Positions 1 to 21,266 of a stretch of 21,423 bases of DNA are shown piece after piece. The position numbers and the translations under genes are program-made. Where the stretch lies: assembly GCF_006345805.1 (NCBI RefSeq), contig NW_021823676.1, positions 1-21,423 on the forward strand, read 5' to 3'. Below the pieces are notes generated by a model, which was not told the origin of the DNA, ran no database searches, and was given only the letters and a program-made list of their open reading frames with translations. Within the stretch, counting starts at the first letter, position 1. Each line of letters starts with the position of its first letter. The DNA is from Octopus sinensis (Eukaryota).

Positions 1-284
1 CAAACCAAAGAAATGATTGTTATTTCCAAAAATCAGAGTTGTATTCCATAGATAACTAAGCCATGAGTGACTGCATTGTGTACCGGGTCGCTACAGCTTT
101 GGGGAAAATGGTAATATTGTGTACTGCGTCGGTTTTAAGGTCATTTAATGGCAAACTATACCAGCATAGGGCACTTTCAAACGCTTCCAAAGAAAATATA
201 ACACTGGTCTTGAAGTATATATGGTAAAATGAAAGACATGGGTGAATTTGCAGACTGTACAACTTGTCCATTAAATGTAACAAA

Positions 285-450
285 AACATAAAAGTGTCAT
301 ATGTGTATCATACTTAATGCAGATACATCATGAAAAAAATTAACTGCGGTATACGTCCGAGATTTGAAGAAAGTATTGCATTTAAAAGTACAAATGTAGC
401 AGGAATGCGAGATGCACATTTCTGCCTCTTTGGATTTCATCAGCACCCGC
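285..450 (-). mobile_element. Decayed short repeat carrying a hammerhead-like motif, copy A (putative Penelope terminal-repeat/retrozyme-like family)
   Basis: Minus strand reads CTGATGA (443-437), 14 nt, GAAATGTGCATC, then CGGAC-N6-CGCAG (361-344) and a tail that aligns by eye with 780-860 on the + strand. Confidence 0.55.
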
Positions 451-650
451 TGGTAATCGCATGCCGAGACAAAAGCGGCCGTCACTGATATAGAAAACCA
501 GTGTTCGAAAAAGCACTAATATTGCAATTAACTGGTCGACTGAATAAAAATTCGTTATGCGCAACAAAAATAGTATTAGTTTAAAATGGTAATTTGTATG
601 TTATACTTGATGCAAATATAACAGGGAAAGAGTGCAGTTAGCAGCTAATA

Positions 651-860
651 AATGCTGCTGACGAAGACCCATAACGGAGAAATGCCGCGCATCAAGCATT
701 GCTTGGAACTGGTTCTGGACGATTTCCGTCTGCTACTGATATAATTTTGTATTATTTAACACCGTACGTCCATAAGAGATAATTCCGGACAAATATCGCA
801 GTTAATTTGGCTTTCTGTAATGTATGTGCATTGAGTATAATATACAGATGACTATTTTAA
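651..860 (+). mobile_element. Decayed short repeat carrying a hammerhead-like motif, copy B
   Basis: CTGACGA (658-664), 14 nt, GAAA (679-682); helix III AUGC/GCAU; UC at 692-693; helix I AAUGCU/AGCAUU. CGGAC-N6-CGCAG at 786-801. Homologous to 285-450 in inverted orientation. Confidence 0.55.
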
Positions 861-887
861 CTTATACTGCTTCTGTTGCCCATAACA

Positions 888-938
888 AATCGAAATCCCA
901 ATCTTACTATCATGAGTCCTAACCACTAAGCCATACGC

Positions 939-940
<2 letters not shown>
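888..940 (-). mobile_element. Truncated tRNA-derived SINE head
   Basis: Reverse complement AGGCGTATGGCTTAGTGGTTAGGACTCATGATAGTAAGATTGGGATTTCGATT has an A-box (TGGCTTAGTGG) and a B-box-like end, and resembles the head of the SINE at 3216-3586. Confidence 0.5.

Positions 941-982
<42 letters not shown>
941..982. repeat. (CA)n microsatellite
   Basis: Perfect AC dinucleotide run. Confidence 0.95.
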
Positions 983-985
<3 letters not shown>

Positions 986-989
986 TGTA

Positions 990-1182
990 TGGAGCAGCAT
1001 AGTTTAGTATTCAGGGTGCTGGATTCATGCTGGACTAATGATCGAAACGTTGTGGTTTCGATTCTTGGACAGCGCAATGTGTTGTGTTCTCGAGCAAATT
1101 ATTTCCTTTCATGCCGTTCCAACTCATCCGGCAAGCAAACATGAGTAATCTTGCGACAGACCGGCGTCCCGTCCAGGTGGAC
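990..1182 (+). mobile_element. Old tRNA-derived SINE with CORE-like central domain
   Basis: B-box-like GGTTTCGATTC; central segment similar to 2118-2180; 3' GACAGACCGGCGTCCCGTCCAGG; ends in (TA)n. Confidence 0.65.
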
Positions 1183-1184
1183 GT

Positions 1185-1220
<36 letters not shown>

Positions 1221-1368
1221 AATGTATGAATGAATTATCCTTTGTTTACCGTTAACATAGAAAATTCAATAAACAGTCACCAGGGTAGCAAAATCATGCA
1301 AGTAGCAAGGATGTAGCGACCTATTCAAAGGTAGAAACTCCGGGTTAATGTGCAGTAATTTGTATAGT

Positions 1369-1654
1369 ATCACTTATATGAGCTAAAGGTATATTTCTAC
1401 CAGTGCTTACATTTGTAAGATCGCTCTATAAGTGTGTTAACAAGGTGATTCTTAGAGAAGAGAATATGGAAGAGTTCAGAGTTGCAAATGTTACGAATTC
1501 CTTTGCCCTTATCATAAGGGAAAGATATGGACAGGATGAACCAATCTAACTTAAAATCTTTATTGTTGTTTTTAAGATACCAAACCAATTTACTTAGAGC
1601 GATCTTACAAATGTAAACACCGGCAGAAACATACCTTCAGCTCATATAAGTGAT
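1369..1654. repeat. 60-bp inverted repeat (arms 1369-1428 and 1595-1654, 55/60 identical) around a 166-bp spacer; MITE-like or hairpin locus
   Basis: Left arm aligned base by base with the reverse complement of the right arm: five transition mismatches, no gaps. Confidence 0.9.
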
Positions 1655-1922
1655 TTTTACCAGTCTTTATAGTTTGAACATTTAGTTCAACTTGCACTTT
1701 ACTTCAATAGAGAAATCTACTTCCAAGCCTTTGAACATTTTTTAAACTAATATACCCCTCTTTATTTGTTCTCTACTTATTATTTCTTTATCCTTTCTCT
1801 TTCTAGGGTCTGCCCTTGATGTCGAATCTACTAACGGTTTTTTAAAAATACTTAATAGCGTTCTGTTTATCATTTATGCCGCCATCAAAATAGTTATAAT
1901 GTCTTGTTGTTGAGATAGGTTC

Positions 1923-2019
1923 TCTTTCTTTCCTGATGAGAAGACTGCATTATTTTACACAGTTTATTCATTTGGAATAAACCAATGTTGTCTTCGAAAC
2001 ATATGTCGAAAGTAAAAGA
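1923..2019 (+). ncRNA. Type I hammerhead ribozyme with intact catalytic core
   Basis: CUGAUGA 1933-1939; helix II GAAGAC/GUCUUC (1940-45/1990-95) with further extension; GAAA 1996-1999; helix III AC-AUAU-GU (palindrome ACATATGT); GUC cleavage triplet 2005-2007; helix I CUUUC/GAAAG plus UCUUU/AAAGA after a 2-nt bulge. Confidence 0.85.
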
Positions 2020-2115
2020 ATTTGAATAACATCTGCGTTCAACTCAATTTATTTACTTATATATATATATATTTATGTCACAGAATCCGGGAACCTATGA
2101 CTCAGGAACGACCTT

Positions 2116-2366
2116 TGGTCCTTGAACAAGACACTTTATTTCACGTTGCTCCAGTTCACTCAGCTAGCAAAAATGAGCTGTACTTGTAATTGAAAGGGGG
2201 GGGGGCTGCCTTGTCACACTCTGTGTCACGCTGAATCTCCCTGAGAACTACTTTAAGGGCACACGTGTGTGTGGAGTGCTCAGCCACTTGCACATCAATT
2301 TCATGAGCAGGCTGTTCCGTTGATCGGATCAACTGGAATCCTCGTCGTCATAACCGAAGGAGTGCC
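2116..2366 (+). mobile_element. 5'-truncated SINE (CORE-like domain plus 3' tail shared with the 3216-3586 SINE)
   Basis: GTCCTTGAACAAGACACTTTATTTCACGTTGCTCCAG core; 2180-2366 aligns closely with the reverse complement of 3221-3390. Confidence 0.85.
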
Positions 2367-2373
2367 AGTTCAA

Positions 2374-2426
2374 TGTATGTGTGTGTTTGTGTGCGTGTAT
2401 GTGTGTGTGTGCGTGCGTGCGTGTAT

Positions 2427-2458
<32 letters not shown>

Positions 2459-2480
2459 ATGTGTGTGTGTGTGTGTGGTG
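2374..2480. repeat. (TG)n compound microsatellite
   Basis: TG/TGCG/TATG run directly after the SINE tail. Confidence 0.95.
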
Positions 2481-2484
2481 TGTT

Positions 2485-2670
2485 CGTATAAAGTCATTTT
2501 TTAAAACCCATGCGAATGAATTTAGACATGGTTAGACGTTCTGCTGCGGAAAGAGTCCGAGGAGAAAATTTTTCTCTTAAGCCTGTCTGAAAACACATTT
2601 TGGTCTGTGAATAATGTCACCGGATCGTATCACGCATGCATTTCTGCGTCTTTTCACTTCGTCAGCTATG
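2485..2670 (-). mobile_element. Decayed short repeat carrying a hammerhead-like motif, copy C
   Basis: Minus strand reads CTGACGA (2665-2659), 14 nt, GAAATGCATG; CGGAC-N6-CGCAG at 2561-2544; 3' end abuts the (CA)n/(TG)n array. Confidence 0.5.
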
Positions 2671-3012
2671 GAAACCAGATCAGTAACTCATAGCTCGATA
2701 AGATTAAATTGTTCTTATTAAAACTGCATCCGGTAAGTTTTGGAATATGCGTAAAGCTTGGTCGAGCTAGAACTAAATAAAGTCGCATGAAGCGATGTTG
2801 AATGAAACAACGTCATATTTAAACATTCGAGTGTATTCGGACGCGATTAGACCTTCTGCTGTGGATTATAATGTTTTCATAATGTTTAAACAGAATTTTC
2901 TCCCGAGAATATCGCTGCAGGGGACGATCTAATAACACCCGAATGCACCCGAACACATTTAATATGACTTTACACGAATATATTTTACTCAACGCTGCTT
3001 TGCGAGACATTA

Positions 3013-3165
3013 TACACACGCACGCACACACACACACACCACACACACACCGCATACACACACACCACACACACACGCATCACACCACACACACACACAC
3101 ACCACAAACATACACACACCACACACACCACACACACTCACACACAAACACACGCACGTATAAAC
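3013..3165. repeat. (CA)n compound microsatellite
   Basis: Imperfect CA/CCACA run. Confidence 0.95.
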
Positions 3166-3215
3166 ATATTCGAGTTCATAATTATCATTAGAAAGACATT
3201 TCTTTGAGAGATTAT

Positions 3216-3586
3216 GGGAAGCACTCTGTCGGTTACGACGACGAGGGTTCCGGAATAGCCTGCTCGTGAAATTAACGTGTAAGTGGCTGAGCACTCCACA
3301 GACACGTGTACCCTTAACGTAGTTTTCGGGGATATTCAGCGTGACACAGAGAGTGACAAGTCCGGCCCCTTGAAACACAGGTACAACAGAAACAGGAAGT
3401 AAGAGTGAGAGAAAGTTGTGGTGGAAGAGTACAGCAGGGATCACCACCATCCCCTGCCGGAGCCTCGTGGAGCTTTTAGGTGTTTTCGCTCAATAAACAC
3501 TCACAACGCCCGGTCTGGGAATCGAAACCGCGATCCTATGACCGCGAGTCCGCTACCCTAACCACTGGGCCATTGCGCCTCCACTC
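3216..3586 (-). mobile_element. Full-length tRNA-derived SINE with 10-bp target-site duplication
   Basis: Head GGAGGCGCAATGGCCCAGTGGTTAGGG...GGTTTCGATTCCC has A and B boxes; TSD GAGAGATTAT at 3206-3215 and 3587-3596. Confidence 0.92.
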
Positions 3587-4306
3587 GAGAGATTATCTTC
3601 TGTAATGTTATGAGAGTCACTCTTTTGAGTGGCGCTATACATCAGAGGATCGTAGAATTATATTGTGGAGGCAAAGCGGTGATGGACTGAAAAATCGAAG
3701 AAGTTTGAGAATAATTGCTTTAGAAGAATCTCACCTGCCATAGAACGGCGTTTTACCTGAAAGAAATGCGGTTTTGACTGGCATAAACTTCTGTTGCTTA
3801 CGAAAATATTAATCTTTGTTTCCTTGTTCCTGTTTGGTTTGAAGACAAGTTTCAGTTCCACCAAAGTACGCAGATTGTTCAATGCGATTAATCCATGTAG
3901 AAAGGAAGGAGCCTCACCATAATCCTTCAGTGCCTGGGAAAACCGGCACTAATAGACATTTGTATGCGGAGATGGAAGATGAAGTTAGTTTTTGATAGAG
4001 CTAGAATCACCGTCCCAGCGTAGGCTTCAAACTATCACATTTGATGGCAGATATGATGTACGTTTATCCAAAAATGTCAACTTCCCCACCCTGCACCCTG
4101 TATGCGAAGTTGGGATCCTTTAATGCATCAAAAATTACTTTTTCGTCAATAAATGCTGATGAAAGTGAAGTGACATAGAATTTTGATGCATTTGATGTTT
4201 ATACAAAATGATATTTTGGGGCGTTCAACCGCAGTCTACGGTCTTATACACCATGAGTCCGAATTAGGTTGGATGTGCGAACAAAGGCTGCATTTGGTCG
4301 CTAATA

Positions 4307-4308
<2 letters not shown>

Positions 4309-4393
<85 letters not shown>
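4309..4393. repeat. (TA)n microsatellite
   Basis: Perfect AT run of about 85 bp. Confidence 0.97.
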
Positions 4394-4396
<3 letters not shown>

Positions 4397-4528
4397 TTTT
4401 GCTTGTTTCAGTGATTTGACTGCAGCCATGCTGGAACACTGCCTTTAGTTCAGCAAATCGACCCCAGGTATTATTCTTTTGAAGCACATTAGCATTGGTT
4501 GTCAAGCGATTGTTGGGGGACAAAAACA

Positions 4529-4564
<36 letters not shown>

Positions 4565-4749
4565 CTCTCTCTCTCTCTCTCCACACACACACGATGGACT
4601 TCTTTCAGTTTCCGTCAACCATATCCACTCACAAGGCTTTAGTCAGCCCGAGGGTATAGTAGAAGACCCTTGCCCAAGGTGACAGGTAGTGGAATTGAAC
4701 CCATAACCATGTGGTTGGTAAGCAAGGTACTTACCACACAGCCACTCCT
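4394..4749 (-). mobile_element. tRNA-derived SINE, second family (copy 1, with internal deletion and internal microsatellite)
   Basis: Head AGGAGTGGCTGTGTGGTAAG...GGTTCAATTCC (A and B boxes); colinear with 9207-9586. Confidence 0.9.
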
Positions 4750-8105: not shown

Positions 8106-8130
8106 TGTTTTATAAATACAAGGAATAATT

Positions 8131-9116
8131 ATATTCATCAAAGTATACACCCATATTGTCAATACACTTTTGCCATTTCAGCGGTAGCTTGTCCACCCCG
8201 GAGTCAATAAAATCTTGGAAGCCTTGTTTTACAGCATCGTCGGAATTAAATTTTTTCCTATCAAAAAGTTATCTAAATTTTGGAAGAAGTGGTAGTCAGT
8301 GGGGGCAAGATCAGGTGAGCATGGTGGATGATGGAGACTGCCAACTCCAACTCCTGTAGTTTCGTCAATTCATTTTTGCGATATTTGGTCTGGCGTGTTA
8401 TAGCAATAAAATAGGAGTGGATCTGTTTGGCTAATCTAGGCTGATTTTTTTGTACGTTTCTGCATCATTTGGTCAGTATACTTTAGTATACTTTGGCCAT
8501 AATTGATGAGTCAGGTTTAATGAAATCATAATGGGTCACACCTGAGCCAGACCACCAAAAACACTATCAGCTTCTTTTGATGAATTTTGCTTTTTGGACT
8601 GTGTTTTGGTGGCTCATCTTTGTCCAACCATTGTCCTGGACGTTTACGGTTGTTGTATTGGATCCATTTCTCATCACATGTTACAATTCGATTCAAAAAT
8701 GATTCATTTTTGCGACGAGAAAGTAGCATAATACAGGCTTCCAAACGTTGCTGTTTCCGATTTTCATTGAGTTCATGTGGAACCCACTTATCCATCTTTT
8801 TCACTTTACCGATTTGAACTAGGTGAGTCAATATTGTTTGCTTGTTAACACCAAGCCACAACGATAATTCACGGGCATTTTGAGATTGATCTGACTCGAC
8901 GGTGGCTTTCAGTTAGTCATTATCCACCTTTGTTTCTGGTCAACCGCATTACTCATTTGTGAGGTCAAAGTTACAAGAACGAAACTTTGCAAACCTATTT
9001 GATACTGTCTGCTGTGTAATAACATTAGAATGAAATACACAATTAATATTCCGAGCTGTCTGTGATGCTGTATTTCCAAGGAAGAACTCTTATTTCAAGA
9101 CTGTACGAATTTCCAT
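8131..9116 (-). pseudogene. Mariner transposase pseudogene (multiple stops and frameshifts)
   Basis: N-terminal HTH remnant (MEIRTVLK*EFFLGNTASQTARNIN), WVPHEL, IVTCDEKW (first catalytic D), CSPDLAPTDYHFF (YSPDLAP motif, third D), C-terminus KWQKCIDNMGVYFDE. Confidence 0.92.
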
Positions 9117-9206
9117 CTCTAAACAAAAATTGCAAAAAGAAAAGACAATTTATAAATACTTTATAAAGCGTAAAATGAGTTAAAATAACGAAATAGATGT
9201 ATCAGC

Positions 9207-9586
9207 TTTACTCTTTTATTTGTTTCAGTAGTTTGATTGTGGCCATGCTGGAACACTGCCTTTAGTCGAGTAAATCGACCCCAGGACTTATTCTTTGTAA
9301 GACCAGTACTTATTCTATCGGTCTCTTTTGCCGAACCACTAAGTGACGGGGACGTAAACACACCAGCATCGGTTGTCAAGCAATGCTAGGGGGACAAACA
9401 CACACATATACACATATATATATATACGACAGGCTTCTTTCAGTTTCCGTCTACCAAATCCACTCACAAGGCATTGGTCGGCCCGGGGCTATAGCAGAAG
9501 ACACTTGCCCAAGATGCCACGCAGTAGGACTGAACCCGGAGCCATGTGGTTGGTTAGCAAGCTACTTACCACACAGCCACTCCTGC
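9207..9586 (-). mobile_element. tRNA-derived SINE, second family (copy 2), inserted in the mariner upstream of the transposase
   Basis: Head GCAGGAGTGGCTGTGTGGTAAGTAGCTTGC...GGGTTCAGTCC; colinear with 4394-4749. Confidence 0.9.
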
Positions 9587-10537: not shown

Positions 10538-10804
10538 AAGTTAAATTAAAATACATGGGTAGTAATAGTTCTCACATCGACAATGCTCTTCTCAATACGT
10601 GTGATGTACCAGTTAAGACAATCTTTTGCACTTCTTGCAGGGATGGTAAGCCAGGGATCATTCTCATATAATTTTCGGTTCCCTTCTTGATCATTCCTAG
10701 TGCTCCTACGATCACTGGTATTGTAACCGCCTTGAGATGCCACATTTTCTCAATTTCAATGAGCAGGTCTTTATATTTTCTGAGCTTGTCAAACTCTTTC
10801 GCTG
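10538..10804 (-). mobile_element. 3' fragment of an R4/Dong-like non-LTR retrotransposon (C-terminal restriction-like endonuclease region), open frame 10802-10572
   Basis: Translates as AKEFDKLRKYKDLLIEIEKMWHLKAVTIPVIVGALGMIKKGTENYMRMIPGLPSLQEVQKIVLTGTSHVLRRALSM*, with the K..KY..L and PVIVGALG motifs of REL LINEs; 5' end sits in (AAT)n. Confidence 0.85.

Positions 10805-10846
<42 letters not shown>

Positions 10847-11552: not shown

Positions 11553-11586
<34 letters not shown>
10805..11586. repeat. Compound trinucleotide array (ATT/GTT, GGT/GAT, AGT, ACC, AAT/AAC)
   Basis: Direct reading; source of the poly-L/I/V/Y ORFs in the track. Confidence 0.92.
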
Positions 11587-12000
11587 CGGCGAAAGAGTTT
11601 GACAAGCTCAGAAAATATAAAGACCTGCTCATTGAAATTGAGAAAATGTGGCATCTCAGGCGGTTACAAATACCAGATCGTAGGAGCACTAGGAATGATC
11701 AGAAGGGACCGAAAATTATATGAGAATGATCCCTGGCTTACCATCCCTGCAAGAAGTGCAAAAGATTGTCTTAACTGGTACATCACACGTATTGAGAAGA
11801 GCATTGTCGATGTGAGAACTATTACTACCCATGTATTTTAATTCACTTTAAAAAAAATGACGAACTAGTGAGTTGTTTTAATGGCCTACCAATGTATACT
11901 ATGAGTTCTTTGCCCTAGGAGTCGGGAAGAACACTCAGCAAGAATGGAAGCAAATTTGAAAGAAGAAAAAAAATATAGAAAATATAGAAAATATATAAAA
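11587..12000 (+). mobile_element. Inverted near-identical copy of the 10538-10804 LINE fragment, with a longer putative 3' UTR ending in A/AAT-rich sequence
   Basis: Same 5' breakpoint and near-identical sequence, differing mainly by 1-2 nt indels that break the frame. Confidence 0.85.
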
Positions 12001-12191: not shown

Positions 12192-12208
12192 TAATAATAA
12201 TGATAATA
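12087..12208. repeat. (AAT)n/(AAC)n array
   Basis: Direct reading. Confidence 0.95.
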
Positions 12209-12537
12209 GCTGACAACAAGGTATGAGATAAGGAAAAAAGAAAAGTCGAGAGATATGACAGGTTAGCTTGGGAAGGTAAGCAGGTGTGGTCGATGAAAAA
12301 GGTAGCAGTAGTACCAATAATTGTCGGAGCCCTGGGAACAGTGAGCAAAAATCTCGAGAAGTACGTGGAAGAAATAAGGGCTGCAATAAGGATGGAACAC
12401 TTGCAGAAAACAGCACTGCTTGGAACCGCTCGAATACTCCGGAAGGTGCCCGAAAAATAAGAGGTGTTACCTTAGTTCACTGGTAGGGAATAGCTGACAC
12501 TGTAGTACATCTCCAGTGTTAGAAGCTGCGCAAAGGC

Positions 12538-12603
<66 letters not shown>
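12209..12603 (+). mobile_element. 3' fragment of a second R4/Dong-like LINE family with 3' UTR and (AAT)n tail
   Basis: 12209-12460 translates as ADNKV*DKEKRKVERYDRLAWEGKQVWSMKKVAVVPIIVGALGTVSKNLEKYVEEIRAAIRMEHLQKTALLGTARILRKVPEK*; (AAT)n at 12538-12603. Confidence 0.85.
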
Positions 12604-12604
<1 letters not shown>

Positions 12605-12884
12605 TAAACAATTTTAGCGTGAAAGGTGTTTATAAGCCATTTAAGAAACACACAAAAACTGTTAGATTCACTTCAAGATTTAAGTTTAATTTACCAAAAT
12701 ATTTTTGACACTTTGAGACCACGACCTGTTCACTGACAAAATTCCGTGTTGCACACGTTTTCGTTCCAGCACACGATCTCAGATCAGGTCACTTGCTATG
12801 CAAGTACATCTCTGTAATAATGATAGTAATAATAATCCTTCCTGCTATAAGAACAAGGCCTGAAATTTTGAGGGATGAGTAAGG

Positions 12885-12985: not shown

Positions 12986-13207
12986 TGTAACTGGTTGTAA
13001 ATATATTCAAAGAAAGTTTAGCCAATGATAGTTTAGGTATTTCTATATCTTTGGAGTAACTGAGGCTTTAATTGTTGTTGTTGTTGTTGTATCTGTTGAT
13101 ATCTTCATGCCTCCATCCCACCCCATCACTGTTCACATATATACTGTTGTTGTTGTTATTCTTTTTTCTTCTATTTCCCAAATCTTTCCAGTCTTCTCCT
13201 TTTCTTA

Positions 13208-13389
13208 ATCCTCCTCCTCCTCCTCCTCCTTATCATCATCATCATCATGATCATCATCGTAATCATCGTCATCATCATCATCATCATCATCATCATCGTC
13301 ATCATCATCGTCATCGTAATCGTCATCATCACCATTATCATCATCATCATCATCATCATCATCATCGTCATCGTCATCATCGTCATCGC

Positions 13390-13446
<57 letters not shown>

Positions 13447-13458
13447 AATCATCATCAT

Positions 13459-13496
<38 letters not shown>

Positions 13497-13503
13497 CCAT
13501 CAC

Positions 13504-13541
<38 letters not shown>

Positions 13542-13543
13542 CC

Positions 13544-13576
<33 letters not shown>

Positions 13577-13583
13577 CCATCAC

Positions 13584-13618
<35 letters not shown>

Positions 13619-13625
13619 CCATCAT

Positions 13626-13680
<55 letters not shown>

Positions 13681-13695
13681 CCATCATAATCATCC

Positions 13696-13750
<55 letters not shown>

Positions 13751-13762
13751 CATCATCATAGC

Positions 13763-13794
<32 letters not shown>

Positions 13795-13838
13795 CGTCGT
13801 CGTCGTCGTCGTCGTCGTCATCATCATCATCATCGTCA

Positions 13839-13869
<31 letters not shown>

Positions 13870-13907
13870 CGACACGTTTTCCTTAGACTTCGTCATTTCT
13901 TCTATAT

Positions 13908-13960
<53 letters not shown>

Positions 13961-13964
13961 GCTA

Positions 13965-14029
<65 letters not shown>

Positions 14030-14030
14030 A
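13208..14030. repeat. Long trinucleotide array (CCT)(CAT)n(CGT)n...(ACT)n(GCT)n
   Basis: Direct reading; source of the poly-H/I/S/M/T ORFs. Confidence 0.95.
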
Positions 14031-14315
14031 CTAAATCCATTCCAGCCTTGACCATCTTTTTCTCTCTTCCAGACACAGTAGAACAAACTACATAACATGT
14101 CCTTTGCTTTATGAAGCGGTGACTTGTTCTTTATAATCAATAGTACTCATTAGTAAGTCTAAACTAATAAATTACTTCATTAGGATATTTAAAAGCGAGG
14201 AAAATCATTAAGTGGTCACGTGGTCGACGTTAGTGATTAATTTTCACCCCGTATCATGAGTCGGTTGTATCTGGTGTTAACCAGCAGAAACTGTGTCATG
14301 CATCGAAGCTGAATT

Positions 14316-14560: not shown

Positions 14561-15508
14561 GTCATTACGCCAATAATAATAATAACACACGCACTGATTT
14601 CACATTACTTCTTTATTGTTAGTCAGGTGGTTAATTATGTAACTAACTAATAGATCGTTTGTTTAATGTGCTCGGTTGTTTGGTAGTCAAAGTTCTTTCG
14701 TGTCTTCAATGACATGCCTTCTCTCCTCAAGGTCTGCTCTGAGTCTGTGAAACGAGCGATCGATTAGTTAGTTGGTTAGATATTTAACCAGTTGACTAAC
14801 AATAATGCAATGATATTGAACCAGTGCATGTGTTATTACTATTGGCTTAACGACCCCCTCGAGATAAAACAAAGTTTCTTTAAACACGATTTCACAACAG
14901 CATTCTTGCAGACCAAATACAAACAAGGATTCAGCTTAGCGTCACGAAGAGTGACACCGTAGATACTCCACGGTGTACCTAGAAAGGCTGTTATGCAACT
15001 GAGACAGTATGGAGATCCGCCTCCTGAAAGTAAACACTTAGAATGAAACATTATATAACGCGTCAACCTGTTCTCTAATGACATTTCTTGGGACAAAGAG
15101 TTGATACCAAACGCCCCGGGAACCACAATCACCAGTATAACAGAACTAGTTCCATCACTGCCATCTGCAACACACTACGGTACTATTTAAATATATTTGA
15201 TATTCAAAAAACGAAATCACGGAAAATAAAAGAGTGAACAATTACAAATAATACACTCCAAATTATTCACATAACTCTAAGCATTTAGGAACAGACACGT
15301 ATTTGGCATAATCTATCTTACAGAGAAAGACCAGATAGTCCGCCAATATGTAACAATTCTAGACCAAAAATCTGAGCATATTTCAACTTACCGGCATATA
15401 TCAATGTTCTTATTGATGAATTTTCAAAGCCGAATCCCTCCTAATGATTCATGAAAAGGATTCAATATATTCGACCTGTAAAATGCATCCAACAATTATC
15501 CTAATTAT

Positions 15509-15729
15509 CGTGTCGACGACGACGACGACGATGATGATGACGATGACGACGACGACGACGACGACGACGATGATGATGATGATGATGGCGATGACGATGA
15601 TGACGATGTCGATGACGATGATGATGGCGATGATGATGATGACGGTGATGATGACGATTACGATGACGATGATGATGATGACGATGATGATGATGATGAT
15701 GATGATGATGGATGATGACGATGATTACA

Positions 15730-15774
<45 letters not shown>

Positions 15775-15795
15775 ATGATGATGATGATGATGAGG
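15509..15795. repeat. (GAC)n(GAT)n trinucleotide array
   Basis: Direct reading; inverted counterpart of 13208-13876. Confidence 0.95.
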
Positions 15796-16479
15796 AGAAG
15801 GATTAAGAAAAGTAGAAGACTGTTTGGAAAGATTTGGGAGTAAGAAGAAAAAAGAATCGAACACAGGTAGCAGTATGAGGTAATAATCTTGTTAAGCAGT
15901 ATAAAGGTTTAACAGAATTAACACATTTCTAACATATTGAGTACCTTTGTGCTTTGTAAAAAAAGAAAACAACAACCAATAACCATATTATATGTGTGTA
16001 TACATACATTCACGCGCACTCACACTGCATATAAAGAAATGAACAAAATGAACTGATCGCCAACAAACTTTAAATAAAATCTTATGCAGAAATAAAATGC
16101 ATATGTTTGATAAAAATCTGGATAAATATAAATATAAAAACACCCAAAATAATGTATAAAAAGTCTCATATTTCGTTCTGCTTAAAAGTTTGTTTGCTTT
16201 GTTTCAGTTCTATTCGGTTTCTACAATTTTGTTATCTTATTTGAATGAAAAAGTTAGGACTTCAGCTAAATGCAAGCTTTTTAATCTTCTCATTTCAGTG
16301 ATAGGCAAAGCATGCCAAACAATATCACAAGTTGGCATTTCGTTTTTTCTTTTCCCCCTCTCTCTTTTTTCCTACAAAATGTAGTTAGCTCAATGGTGCC
16401 ACTCGAATAAACATACCTACTTCCGGTTACCCATCTGGCGTATTCAATAGATATGTATACATACTTACACACGCACTTA

Positions 16480-18499: not shown

Positions 18500-19460
18500 T
18501 GTTGGCACCTCAAACATGTCGTAGCAGACTTCCATTGGTTTTTCCTTTTGTTTTGCAGTGTGTCTCGTCTTTAATTGGCTTAGGTGTCTCTTATGTTCCC
18601 AACGCTGTCCTTTAATTACATACATCATGTTTCTTAATCTGTTCGTTACAAAACCATCCTCCTAGGCTTCTTTACCGTTTTTGAAAATTTTTAAATGCAC
18701 TTTATCTCCTACTTCAAAATGTTTTGTTGCTTTTCTGTATTTCCTTTAAATATATTTTTTCCTGGCAATAAGTTATCGAAGATCGATTTAATTTTTCGCG
18801 CGAACATTTAGCTCTGCCGGAGACTTTCCTGAACAGTCAAGAATTTCGTTTGCGCTTCGTCATTACCTACGTCATTCCTTGCTCTTTTTTTAACCCTCGC
18901 TTGAAAGTATCAACGAATCTTTCTTCCTGTCCGTTTGACTTCGGATGGTAGGGCGGGGTAAAAATATGCTTTATCGCATGTATTTTATCGAAAATTTTGA
19001 ATTCACTGCCCGTAAATTTGTGTTCCATTATCTGATACCAATGTGTCTGGCACACTGTATCGGGAAAATGATTCATACAAGAACTTCATTGTTGTCTTTG
19101 CCGTTAGTTTATCGAACCTGCATACCTCTGGCCACTTTGTACCGCTATCAACAACGATTAGATACTATACGCCGTTCACCGGTCAAGTGTAGTCAATATG
19201 TACCCTGTACTACTGCTATCCATCTCAGACCACGATTGGTGTTTCACCGGTGCTACTTTGGCTGCTAGCGCACAATCTCTACATGATTTCACACAATTTT
19301 CAATGTCCCGGTCCATTGTCAGCCAATATACATATCTTTTAATAAAGGCTTTCATTCTCTACATTCCCGGATGTCAACCGTGGAATTCCTGCAGTCTTCG
19401 TTTCTGTAGTGCGTACATTAAAACATTGTCGCATAGCGAAAAATTATTCGAATTTATATT
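18500..19460 (-). pseudogene. Gypsy integrase pseudogene
   Basis: HG*HPGM*RMKAFIKRYVYW...SCRDCALAAK (HHCC finger); LVSDNGTQFTGSEF and PYHPKSNGQEERFVDTFKR (DDE core); several stops and frameshifts. Confidence 0.88.
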
Positions 19461-19466
19461 TTTATT

Positions 19467-20096
19467 TTACTTATTTTTCAACATTTCTTTCATTCTTGTA
19501 ATGTAATTATCCTTTGCGGATTTCATTTTTATATCATGCGCTGTCACTAGCAGTTCGTGAATAACATTACACATTATGTTTTTAATTAATTTTTTCTTCA
19601 GTTCAGCTGCTGTATTCTTTTCACTGGTGGGGCAGCCATCTAATTTTTTAAAGTACCGACTTAATAGGAGATTCCATAAATCGGATAACTCCAACCAGTC
19701 GGTTGCGTTCTTTACGACGAAAACTTTCGCCTTGCAAGTATTTCCTCGAAATGTGACATCATTCCACATTTCGCCCACAGAGTGTAGTTTGTCACCCGTC
19801 ATGCAACGTGCAGTTTCCGCTGTTTTTCTTAACACAGGTTTCCCTATTTTCTTCCACGTGTTGGTGCTAATGACTGAAATGTCATAACCAGTATCCAGTT
19901 GTATTTTAATATTTATTCCATTTACTTTTACGTGTACAAATTTCCTTATTTGGGAATCGATTTTACTTTCTGCTGAGAGCACTTTGGAATTTTTTACATT
20001 TGACCATTGCACTTTTGTTCTACAGTGTGAACCTTTGACAACTGTAATATTTTTGGTTTTTAAAAGGACCATCTTTACTGAAATGTAGGCCGCCAC
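19467..20096 (-). pseudogene. Gypsy aspartic protease fused in frame to the RNaseH-integrase linker
   Basis: KFVHVKVNGINIKIQLDTGYDISVIS (retroviral-type DTG motif), then AELKKKL|IKNIMCNVIHELLVTAHDIKMKSAKDNYI with no RT YxDD region. Confidence 0.85.
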
Positions 20097-20792
20097 ATCC
20101 GTAACATGGATTAGCCTAGCAAGCTTCTTTGGTTATACTTTTTTCGGTCGACATATCTGTACTTTAGCGAAATCCTTTTCTTAAATTTTTCTTACATCGT
20201 GTTTCAGATTTACCATCCTTTCACATTCTTCTGCAACAGTCTCCAGGGTTAAATCTTGGTTCGCTTGTTCAAGTTTTGAAAGAACTCGTACCAGTATTTC
20301 TGTATCTTCATTTGCTCTAAGACCTTTGTACAAAAATGACGCATTTAAACATCTCAGGAGTAAGTTCTTTAAGTTTAAAACTTTCACACATTCTGTTGAC
20401 TGTTCCTGCATAAGTAATAAAGTTATCATCCTCTTTTTTAGTTAAATTCCAACACTCCATATGATGATAAATGGAGAAGTTTTATCATCGAACATATTAG
20501 ACAGTAATTTGATTGTTTCCTGAAAACAAATTTCAGTAGACTTTTTGGGCAATACGAAATTACAGCATCGTTCTTGCTCAGACGGCGCTAATTTACGTAA
20601 TAATAACCTTACGTTTTCTTCGTACGACCATGTCTTGCAATTTTTCTTAAAAACCCCCTCGTGCCGTCTGTAGTATGCTGCAAAAGTTATACTCTTCTTT
20701 GGGTTATAACTGAATTCTGTTATGGAGTTCCAAACGCCGTCTGGCGAAAACGAACTTACTGCATCTTTGGGCTTCTTTGTGTATAACTCCAA
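20070..20792 (-). pseudogene. Gypsy gag pseudogene with CCHC zinc-knuckle remnant
   Basis: YYRRHEGVFKKNCKTWSYEENVRLLLRKL...; LSKLEQANQDLTLETVAEECERMVNLKHD; NPCYGCGGLHFSKDGPFKN (knuckle, last C lost). Confidence 0.8.
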
Positions 20793-20957
20793 TAATTGTT
20801 GTTGTTATATTTGTTGCTGTACTAGTTGCTTCTGCAACTCCTGTTGCTGTTCTTGTTGTTACTTTAGCAATTGTATTACAGGAGCTAATGGGTCTTTCAT
20901 CATTTAACAAGTTGTATCACGAACAAATTGTTAAATAACCTATGTGAGCTTCGAAAC

Positions 20958-20968
20958 CCTCGTCGCCA
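20958..20968 (-). promoter_or_regulatory. Primer-binding site of the Gypsy element
   Basis: TGGCGACGAGG, 2 nt downstream of the LTR end (...CAACA TC TGGCGACGAGG). Confidence 0.75.
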
Positions 20969-20970
20969 GA

Positions 20971-21266
20971 TGTTGTGTTCTCCATTCCCAAATGTCGTGG
21001 TAACGTCACGATATTGTGACGGATGGTTTAGCTACACTGTACCAGTGTTGTAACAGTAAACAAGATAGCAATGCAGTCGTAATAACAACGTAACGATCCA
21101 ACAATCTCTCACGAAACAACAGTCAATATTCCAAACGAACGAACAAACCAACCGACACCTTCCGACTCAACCCAAACTAACACACAAACTTCACTCCGAC
21201 CTCTACTATTTATAATCATTCGGTCGAGTCTATTTCTCACAAGGGGGCGTCGTGACTCTCATCACA
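20971..21266 (-). repeat. 5' LTR (about 296 bp)
   Basis: Minus strand begins TGTGA and ends CAACA next to the PBS; outer boundary inferred only from the TG..CA termini because no second LTR is present. Confidence 0.7.

What the first reader, a model, noticed from the sequence alone, without database searches (positions are those of the whole stretch)
1923..2019. Intact type I hammerhead ribozyme with an unusually long, branched helix II
Seen in sequence: every conserved core base is present (C3-A9 = CUGAUGA 1933-39; G12-A15.1 = GAAA 1996-99; U16.1 = 2006; C17 = 2007). Helix I is CUUUC/GAAAG, then a UA bulge, then UCUUU/AAAGA. Helix II is GAAGAC/GUCUUC, a U.U mismatch, GCAUU/AAUGU, a 10-nt one-sided bulge and an apical GUUUAUUC/GAAUAAAC hairpin. 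Helix III is 2 bp closing AUAU, making the 8-nt palindrome ACAUAUGU. Established: a short palindromic helix III is the signature of minimal type I HHRs of Penelope-like elements, retrozymes and newt satellite 2, which cleave as dimers. Inference: this copy may self-cleave after C2007. Helix II here is about 56 nt, far longer than in typical minimal HHRs, and the element ends in (TA)n about 40 nt downstream. In an intron, an active copy would cut the host pre-mRNA.
Basis: partly seen in the sequence, partly recalled or inferred. Interest (0 to 1): 0.9.

Follow-up and report, generated by a model that had tools for sequence, protein, structure and literature searches.

The report
Hammerhead ribozyme relic in octopus DNA
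This is a real, sequence-intact copy of the self-cutting "hammerhead" RNA motif that rides on Penelope-type jumping genes in animals, here as one copy with an unusually long middle stem in an octopus genome; it is a new example of a known thing rather than a new kind.

Summary
Every hammerhead core base and all three helices sit at the stated coordinates. Dinucleotide shuffles expect about 6e-6 such motifs per 21 kb window, and about 1e-8 if the 8-nt palindrome is also required.

Rfam Hammerhead_1 is the top hit on a narrow scan. It scores 18.6 bits against a gathering score of 34, because 52 nt of helix II fall outside the model (nothing).

The isolated 97 nt folds into helices I and II. Two copies co-fold into a double hammerhead with an 8-bp intermolecular helix III.

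The host is an octopus. The window has no Penelope-like (PLE) reverse transcriptase/endonuclease ORF, no second hammerhead and no paralog, and no relatives could be reached with these tools.

Best reading: a solitary relic of a PLE pseudo-LTR or non-LTR retrozyme unit, ending 38 nt before a (TA)7 run.

Cleavage activity and intron location remain untested. Interest is modest.

The parts
1923..1932 (+). Helix I, 5' strand (outer UCUUU 1923-27, inner CUUUC 1928-32)
   Evidence: Pairs with 2015-19 and 2008-12, all Watson-Crick. Pair probabilities are 0.45-0.73 in the isolated 97-mer.
1933..1939 (+). Core strand C3-A9 (CUGAUGA)
   Evidence: Exact match. Aligned to the Rfam RF00163 core.
1940..1995 (+). 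Helix II: a 56-nt interrupted hairpin. Order from the core: 6 bp, U.U, 5 bp including one G.U, a 10x1 internal loop, 8 bp, and the AUUUG loop.
   Evidence: The MFE equals the centroid at -14.6 kcal/mol, z = -3.81, with 0 of 200 shuffles folding as well. Pair probability is about 0.78 in the 97-mer. Rfam treats 52 nt of it as a local end.
1996..1999 (+). Core strand G12-A15.1 (GAAA)
1999..2006 (+). Helix III: the 8-nt palindrome ACAUAUGU. In a monomer this gives 2 bp plus an AUAU loop; in a dimer it gives 8 intermolecular bp.
   Evidence: Exact palindrome. Monomer helix III probability is 0.01-0.02. The duplex energy is -8.4 kcal/mol and the helix forms in the cofold MFE.
2007..2008 (+). Predicted cleavage site, between C17 (2007) and G1.1 (2008)
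   Evidence: Position follows from hammerhead numbering (established knowledge). Cleavage was not tested.
2008..2019 (+). Helix I, 3' strand (GAAAG, UA bulge, AAAGA)
2020..2057 (+). 38-nt tail between the ribozyme and the TA run. It contains a small hairpin, 2023-27 / 2037-41.
   Evidence: Its length matches the 30-40 bp 'tail' described for PLE insertions (PMC8557442, PMC11167929). The assignment is an inference.
2058..2072 (.). (TA)7 run, the putative AT-rich insertion target
   Evidence: PLEs nick AT-rich DNA or (TA)n (PMC11167929, PMC8557442). TA runs are very common in this window, so the evidence is weak.
1655..1922 (+). Non-coding body of the presumed element upstream of the ribozyme. 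The 5' boundary is uncertain.
   Evidence: No ORF of 60 aa or more (the longest stop-free stretch is 55 aa) and no unusual structure (z = +0.85). It is bounded upstream by a MITE-like palindrome ending at 1654. An imperfect repeat, 1673-1700 versus 2021-2050, is not significant (P = 0.12).

Best explanation
A genuine type I hammerhead ribozyme of the repeat-borne animal class, carried by a short non-coding retroelement fragment in an octopus genome. The fragment is most likely the 3' pseudo-LTR end of a 5'-truncated Penelope-like element, or a monomer of its non-autonomous derivative (a non-LTR retrozyme).

In the parent element, tandem units put two ribozymes on one transcript. Their palindromic helix III strands (ACAUAUGU) pair into an 8-bp helix. 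Each core then cuts after C17, leaving a 5'-OH and a 2',3'-cyclic phosphate and producing unit-length RNA. Reverse transcription that starts internally at an AT-rich nick leaves the short tail next to (TA)n.

This genomic copy is solitary. Any cleavage would therefore be slow as a monomer (2-bp helix III) or would need a second transcript of the same family. The 44-nt extension of helix II is a lineage-specific expansion outside the catalytic core.

Shown: the motif, its non-random nature, its fold and the predicted dimer. Inferred: the link to a PLE or retrozyme, the meaning of the tail and TA run, and any catalytic activity.
For: The core and helices are exact. Chance expectation is 6e-6 to 1e-8 per window. 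Rfam Hammerhead_1 is the best family, with a full-length alignment at E = 0.023 on the narrow scan. Helices I and II dominate the ensemble of the 97-mer, and helix II alone has z = -3.8. The dimer MFE is -47.0 against 2 x -19.8 kcal/mol and has the double-hammerhead topology. The host is an octopus whose window is packed with retroelements. The literature reports palindromic short helix III, helix II longer than canonical, helix I of 4-5 bp and a G10.1-C11.1 pair in PLE hammerheads, which cleave as dimers (PMC4209133). It also reports the ribozyme near the 3' end, a 30-40 bp tail and (TA)n or AT-rich targets (PMC8557442, PMC11167929), dispersed retrozyme monomers derived from PLE pseudo-LTRs (10.64898/2026.07.22.740005), and 235 Hammerhead_1 hits in a squid genome (PMC6962438).
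Against: No RT or GIY-YIG ORF, second ribozyme or pseudo-LTR partner occurs in 21 kb. No paralog could be retrieved, so multi-copy status and covariation are unknown. The Rfam score is below the gathering score. The unpaired base between A9 and G10.1 that is typical of PLE minimal hammerheads is absent. With 100 nt or more of flank the MFE uses another fold that is 6 kcal/mol better than the ribozyme-constrained one. TA runs are so common here that adjacency to one is weak evidence. The 403-nt body is not rod-like as retrozyme circles are.
Confidence: 0.65

Rival explanations
1. It is a real hammerhead-derived sequence but is catalytically inert where it sits. The solitary copy cannot form helix III, it has no loop-loop tertiary contact, and it is trapped in competing AU-rich folds. 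On this reading it is a molecular fossil only.
For: Monomer helix III probability is 0.01-0.02. Helix I probability falls to 0.00, and helix II to about 0.23, once 100 nt or more of flank is included. Single PLE minimal hammerheads showed no detectable cleavage, and dimers only low activity (PMC4209133). The candidate pseudoknot is not significant (P = 0.14).
Against: Every core base and 31 pairs are intact, which argues for a young copy or for constraint. Ribozymes fold co-transcriptionally, so equilibrium folds of long AU-rich RNA are poor guides. An axolotl hammerhead with the same 2-bp plus tetraloop helix III cleaved 22% in one hour as a monomer (PMC7229834).
Confidence: 0.4
2. The ribozyme belongs to a different carrier that is not PLE-related. 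One possibility is a SINE-like element of the Schistosoma Sm-alpha kind or a satellite-type repeat; another is that it is part of the adjacent MITE-like or SINE sequences.
For: There is no PLE coding sequence in the window. The ribozyme lies between a MITE-like palindrome (1369-1654) and a SINE-like sequence (from about 2079). Type I hammerheads do occur in SINE-like and satellite repeats (PMC3088659, PMC7229834).
Against: No sequence similarity links 1655-2057 to the neighbouring repeats. Recent work derives animal hammerhead repeats from PLE pseudo-LTRs (10.64898/2026.07.22.740005), so this rival partly merges with the main reading.
Confidence: 0.15
3. It is a host-exapted hammerhead inside an intron or UTR that cuts a host transcript, in the manner of the conserved intronic hammerheads of amniotes.
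For: Only that the motif is fully intact.
Against: No exon or host gene is evident in the window; every sizeable ORF is transposon-derived or low-complexity. There is no evidence of conservation. Retrozyme copies are depleted from introns in frogs (10.64898/2026.07.22.740005).
Confidence: 0.05
4. It is a chance resemblance in AT-rich sequence.
For: Rfam does not report it at the gathering score or on wider scans.
Against: Expectation is 6e-6 per window for the two basal helices and 1.4e-8 with the palindrome. That is well below 1 even across a genome of about 1e5 windows, before counting 18 further pairs. The best Rfam family is the hammerhead, aligned end to end.
Confidence: 0.02

Closest known systems
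Rfam RF00163 Hammerhead_1: repeat-type type I hammerheads of Schistosoma Sm-alpha, newt satellite 2 and cave-cricket satellite
   Same: Identical core, open helix I, G10.1-C11.1 pair, and an 8-nt A-C-NNNN-G-U palindrome at helix III. The model aligns over positions 1-45 of 45.
   Different: Helix II is 56 nt and 19 pairs, where the model has about 14 nt. This drops the score to 18.6 bits against a gathering score of 34. No recognisable loop 1/loop 2 contact was found.
Minimal and variant hammerheads in the pseudo-LTRs of Penelope-like elements (Cervera & de la Pena 2014, PMC4209133)
   Same: Helix II longer than canonical, helix I of about 5 bp next to the core, a palindromic helix III that implies dimeric cleavage, and a location close to an element end beside AT-rich DNA.
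   Different: Their helix II is 6-8 bp, not 19 bp with internal loops. The usual unpaired base between A9 and G10.1 is missing here. No RT/GIY-YIG ORF or second pseudo-LTR is present in this window.
Animal non-LTR retrozymes (PMC7229834; 10.64898/2026.07.22.740005)
   Same: A type I hammerhead in a low-GC (31%) non-coding unit of a few hundred nt. Dispersed monomers of such units are documented.
   Different: Retrozymes are defined by tandem units and circular RNAs. This is a single unit with no tandem partner and no rod-like fold.
'HHR_half_core' cases in Naiad PLEs (PMC8557442)
   Same: The two core halves lie unusually far apart (35-50 nt there, 56 nt here). Naiads prefer (TA)n targets and persist as remnants in cephalopods.
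   Different: Those cases were reported as not fitting stem/loop descriptors. Here the spacer folds into a clean helix II. No link to a Naiad ORF was tested or testable.

Membership tests
Hammerhead ribozyme, type I (Rfam RF00163 / clan CL00010) | Conserved core: C3 U4 G5 A6 N7 G8 A9, G12 A13 A14, A15.1-U16.1, and H17 | tested here: met
   CTGATGA 1933-39, GAAA 1996-99, T2006, C2007
Hammerhead ribozyme, type I (Rfam RF00163 / clan CL00010) | Three helices around the core, with helix I open-ended | tested here: met
   Helices I and II appear in the MFE and centroid of the 97-mer. Helix III is only 2 bp in the monomer but 8 bp in the dimer.
Hammerhead ribozyme, type I (Rfam RF00163 / clan CL00010) | Covariance-model score at or above Rfam's gathering score (34 bits) | tested here: not met
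   18.6 bits, E = 0.023 on the 107-nt scan. No hit on the whole window or on 251 nt. The shortfall is explained by the 52-nt local end in helix II.
Hammerhead ribozyme, type I (Rfam RF00163 / clan CL00010) | Site-specific Mg2+-dependent self-cleavage 3' of position 17 | not testable with these tools
   Needs in vitro transcription or mapping of RNA ends.
Hammerhead ribozyme, type I (Rfam RF00163 / clan CL00010) | Tertiary contact between helices I and II (loop-loop or pseudoknot) for fast cleavage | tested here: inconclusive
   A possible 6-bp pairing, 1953-58 with 2012-17, is not above chance (P = 0.14).
PLE pseudo-LTR hammerhead | Short helix III with palindromic 15.x-16.x positions that allow a dimeric ribozyme | tested here: met
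   ACAUAUGU is an exact palindrome. The cofold MFE forms the 8-bp intermolecular helix.
PLE pseudo-LTR hammerhead | Lies in a pseudo-LTR flanking an RT plus GIY-YIG ORF | tested here: not met
   No such ORF or fragment in any frame of the 21 kb. 5'-truncated copies would also lack it, so this does not exclude PLE descent.
PLE pseudo-LTR hammerhead | Many genomic copies with compensatory changes in the helices | not testable with these tools
   No eukaryotic genome search is available. The attempts found no relatives.
PLE pseudo-LTR hammerhead | Unpaired nucleotide between A9 and G10.1 (recurrent in minimal PLE hammerheads) | tested here: not met
   G1940 follows A1939 directly and pairs with C1995.
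Animal non-LTR retrozyme | Two or more tandem units, each with a type I hammerhead | tested here: not met
   One core only, with no tandem repeat and no second copy. It could at most be a monomer derivative.
Animal non-LTR retrozyme | Expressed as small circular RNA | not testable with these tools
   Needs RNA data.

The most novel reading that the evidence does not exclude
This copy may represent a cephalopod lineage of Penelope-like or retrozyme elements whose hammerhead carries a structured expansion of about 44 nt in helix II. Such ribozymes escape Rfam's gathering score and the usual stem/loop descriptors. They could be what the 'half-core' cases in (TA)n-targeting Naiad elements really are. 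If so, hammerheads would be more universal in PLEs than currently stated, and the expansion might be a protein-binding or folding module.
Probability: 0.12. Interest if true: 0.5.

Novelty: new member of a known kind. Interest (0 to 1): 0.3.

Why it matters
Hammerhead ribozymes on Penelope-like elements and retrozymes are well documented in animals, so one more copy changes little. Two points have some value.

First, it is a concrete example of a fully intact hammerhead that standard annotation misses. Rfam at its gathering score does not report it, and fixed-size descriptors would also skip it, only because helix II is long. Hammerhead counts in cephalopod and other genomes may therefore be underestimates.

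Second, if the family proves to be multi-copy and tied to a PLE clade thought to lack hammerheads, that claim would need revising.

For the host, a solitary, dimer-dependent copy is unlikely to matter unless it lies in a transcribed intron.

Tried and rejected
1. Rfam on the whole window and on 1850-2100 gave no hit. Only the 107-nt scan shows Hammerhead_1.

2. Self-BLAST of 1-4300 against the window found no paralog of 1655-2057.

3. A single-sequence covariance model (R1) run with filters off on the window plus two fetched loci returned only the self hit.

4. A six-frame 'protein' query built from the element, meant to catch ORFs called on paralogs, found nothing. Exact look-ups of three window ORFs also found nothing.

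5. Pattern scans gave nothing useful:
- viral contigs: 0 matches;
- bacterial and archaeal genomes: 0 matches;
- metagenomes: 3 matches, all copies of one unrelated repeat in which neither helix I nor helix II can form.

6. Transposon proteins from the window were used to fetch more host DNA. Only one Octopus sinensis contig was obtained. It fixed the host but holds no hammerhead copy. Two ENA loci sharing a LINE tail come from other organisms.

7. Three other CTGAYGA...GAAA sites (443-, 658+, 2665-) have no helices I or II.

8. Weak leads that did not reach significance:
- candidate pseudoknot 1953-58 / 2012-17, P = 0.14;
- terminal direct repeat 1673-1700 / 2021-2050, P = 0.12;
- a 10-bp pairing of 1915-24 with 2089-98, which lies in the neighbouring SINE-like sequence and is treated as chance.

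9. The supplement of PMC8557442 with PLE consensus sequences is not held.

Full report
**What is there.**
- Core: CTGATGA at 1933-1939, GAAA at 1996-1999, T2006 and C2007.
- Helix I: TCTTT/AAAGA (1923-27/2015-19) and CTTTC/GAAAG (1928-32/2008-12), separated by a TA bulge at 2013-14.
- Helix II: GAAGAC/GTCTTC (1940-45/1990-95), a U.U mismatch, GCATT/AATGT (1947-51/1984-88), a 10-nt loop (1952-61), and an apical GTTTATTC/GAATAAAC hairpin (1962-69/1975-82) with loop ATTTG.
- Helix III: the exact palindrome ACATATGT at 1999-2006.
- The conserved G10.1-C11.1 pair and the 1.1-2.1 pair are present.

Four corrections apply. G1947.U1988 is a wobble pair. C1983 is unpaired, so the loop is a 10x1 internal loop. 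Helix II is one interrupted hairpin with no junction, so 'branched' is wrong. The TA run is (TA)7 at 2058-2072, 38 nt beyond 2019.

**Is it more than chance?** A descriptor scan finds nine core-only candidates on both strands of the real window. Only this one has three or more pairs in both flanking helices. In 1500 dinucleotide-preserving shuffles there were 7.5 core-only candidates per window. The expectation for helix I >=5 and helix II >=6 contiguous Watson-Crick pairs next to the core is 6e-6 per window. Adding the 8-nt palindrome brings it to 1.4e-8. This ignores the outer half of helix I and the 13 distal pairs of helix II. Even across a genome of roughly 1e5 such windows a chance origin is negligible.

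**Family models.** Rfam reports nothing at gathering score on the whole window, and nothing at E<=10 on 1850-2100. On 1918-2024 the top hit is RF00163 Hammerhead_1 at 1927-2013(+), with 18.6 bits against a gathering score of 34 and E = 0.023. It aligns over model positions 1-45 of 45, with the core, helix I and the palindromic helix III all matched. A 52-nt stretch of helix II is passed over as a local end. The motif is therefore recognised as a hammerhead, and the long helix II explains why routine annotation misses it.

**Folding.**
- The 97-mer folds with helices I and II in both MFE and centroid. Pair probabilities are 0.45-0.79, and helix III is essentially absent in the monomer at 0.01-0.02.
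- Helix II alone is a very stable hairpin for its composition: -14.6 kcal/mol, z = -3.81, with 0 of 200 shuffles as good.
- Two copies co-fold to -47.0 kcal/mol, against 2 x -19.8 for two monomers. That structure keeps both helices II, forms the 8-bp intermolecular helix III (-8.4 kcal/mol as a duplex), and pairs the helix I strands across the molecules. This is the double-hammerhead arrangement.
- Against activity in place: with 100 nt or more of flank, helix I has probability 0.00 and helix II about 0.23. The MFE is then 6 kcal/mol better than the ribozyme-constrained fold. It uses, among others, a 10-bp pairing of 1915-24 with 2089-98, which lies in the neighbouring repeat.
- The presumed 403-nt element is not unusually structured (z = +0.85).

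**Surroundings and host.** The window is microsatellite-rich animal DNA. A SINE at 9214-9586 is 88.8% identical, and an LTR-retroelement stretch at 19578-21067 is 82.8% identical, to Octopus sinensis contig VCDQ01009457.1. The host is therefore an octopus. Other content:
- a Mos1/mariner transposase remnant;
- gag-like DUF7083, aspartic protease and integrase fragments;
- three LINE 3' tails.

No reverse transcriptase or GIY-YIG endonuclease fragment of a Penelope-like element appears in any frame. Immediately upstream of the presumed element lies a 286-bp MITE-like palindrome, 1369-1654, whose arms match at 55 of 62 positions. There is no second hammerhead, tandem unit or diverged copy in the window.

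**Relatives.** None could be reached. The collections available hold almost no octopus DNA. Protein-space searches, pattern scans of viral, metagenome and prokaryote contigs, and the single-sequence model all failed. The three metagenome matches are copies of an unrelated repeat that cannot form helices I or II.

**How it most likely works.** The architecture matches what is described for animal repeat-borne hammerheads.
- A 1-2 bp helix III with a palindromic loop prevents efficient cleavage by one copy but allows two copies on a tandem transcript to form an active dimer.
- In Penelope-like elements helix II is longer than canonical and helix I is 4-5 bp, with low activity in vitro (PMC4209133; dimer model also in PMC3088659).
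- PLE insertions carry the ribozyme in the pseudo-LTR near the 3' end. They often have a 30-40 bp tail and favour (TA)n or AT-rich targets (PMC8557442).
- For an Anolis element, the protein nicks AT-rich DNA and starts reverse transcription internally, which creates the tail. There the ribozyme is protein-assisted and dispensable for insertion in vitro (PMC11167929).
- Animal retrozymes appear to derive from PLE pseudo-LTRs and leave dispersed monomers (10.64898/2026.07.22.740005).

I therefore read 1655-2057 as a 5'-truncated PLE end or a retrozyme-type monomer inserted at a TA run, with the ribozyme being the parent element's transcript-processing device. The motif and its fold are shown. 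The carrier, the meaning of the tail and TA run, and any cleavage are inferred. An axolotl hammerhead with the same 2-bp plus tetraloop helix III cleaved 22% in an hour as a monomer (PMC7229834), so weak monomer activity is possible.

**Novelty and verdict.** Type I hammerheads on retroelements are well known, and 235 Hammerhead_1 hits were reported in a squid genome (PMC6962438). This is a new member of that kind. The 56-nt helix II is unusual, but stem length varies widely in the class, and a single copy cannot define a variant. One link is worth following: Naiad PLEs target (TA)n, survive as remnants in cephalopods and are said to lack canonical hammerheads, yet they show 'half cores' 35-50 nt apart (PMC8557442). 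A long-helix-II hammerhead such as this one could be what those are. I give that a probability of about 0.12. Overall interest is 0.3.

Noticed in passing
window 1369-1654: A 286-bp palindromic, MITE-like foldback. Its terminal arms (1369-1430 and 1593-1654) match at 55 of 62 positions. It sits directly upstream of the presumed ribozyme element.
   Followed up: partly
window 2201-2482 and 3081-3369: Two inverted copies (72% identity) of a SINE-like sequence flanking (TG)n/(AC)n microsatellites. A smaller inverted pair lies at 289-359 / 786-859.
   Followed up: no
window 9206-9586 and 4392-4749: Copies of a SINE that is 77-89% identical to sequences on an Octopus sinensis contig (L006). This identifies the host as an octopus.
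   Followed up: yes
window 18870-21067 (- strand): A degraded LTR-retroelement with gag-like DUF7083, aspartic protease and integrase zinc-finger/core fragments. No reverse transcriptase lies between them. It is 82.8% identical at the DNA level to the O. sinensis contig.
   Followed up: partly
window 8113-8912 (- strand): A frameshifted Mos1/mariner-type transposase remnant (Pfam Transposase_1). Its closest proteins are SETMAR-like entries from bees, beetles and amphipods, at 60-72% identity.
   Followed up: partly
window 10549-10813 (-), 11554-11838 (+), 12208-12612 (+): Three 3' ends of one LINE family, each abutting (AAT)n/(ATT)n runs. Related ORF tails (65-79% aa identity) occur in a shrimp and in unnamed ENA and JGI eukaryote contigs.
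   Followed up: partly
window 13146-14040 and 15495-15800: Very long trinucleotide microsatellites, (CAT)n-type and (GAT)n-type, that are mutually complementary. The arms are about 214 nt, 85% complementary and 2 kb apart. They create long spurious ORFs.
   Followed up: no
window 1953-1958 with 2012-2017: UUUUAC in the helix II internal loop is complementary to GUAAAA in the 3' strand of helix I. This could be a pseudoknot or a competitor of outer helix I. It is not above chance (P = 0.14).
   Followed up: yes
window 1673-1700 vs 2021-2050: An imperfect direct repeat, both copies able to form a TTTGAA(C/T)...GTTCAACT hairpin. If real, it would mark a unit of about 348 nt plus a tail. It is not significant (P = 0.12).
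   Followed up: yes
L001 1961-2021, L002 3488-3548, L003 1068-1128: Three metagenome contigs share one repeat that matches the hammerhead core-plus-palindrome pattern by accident. Helices I and II cannot form.
   Followed up: yes
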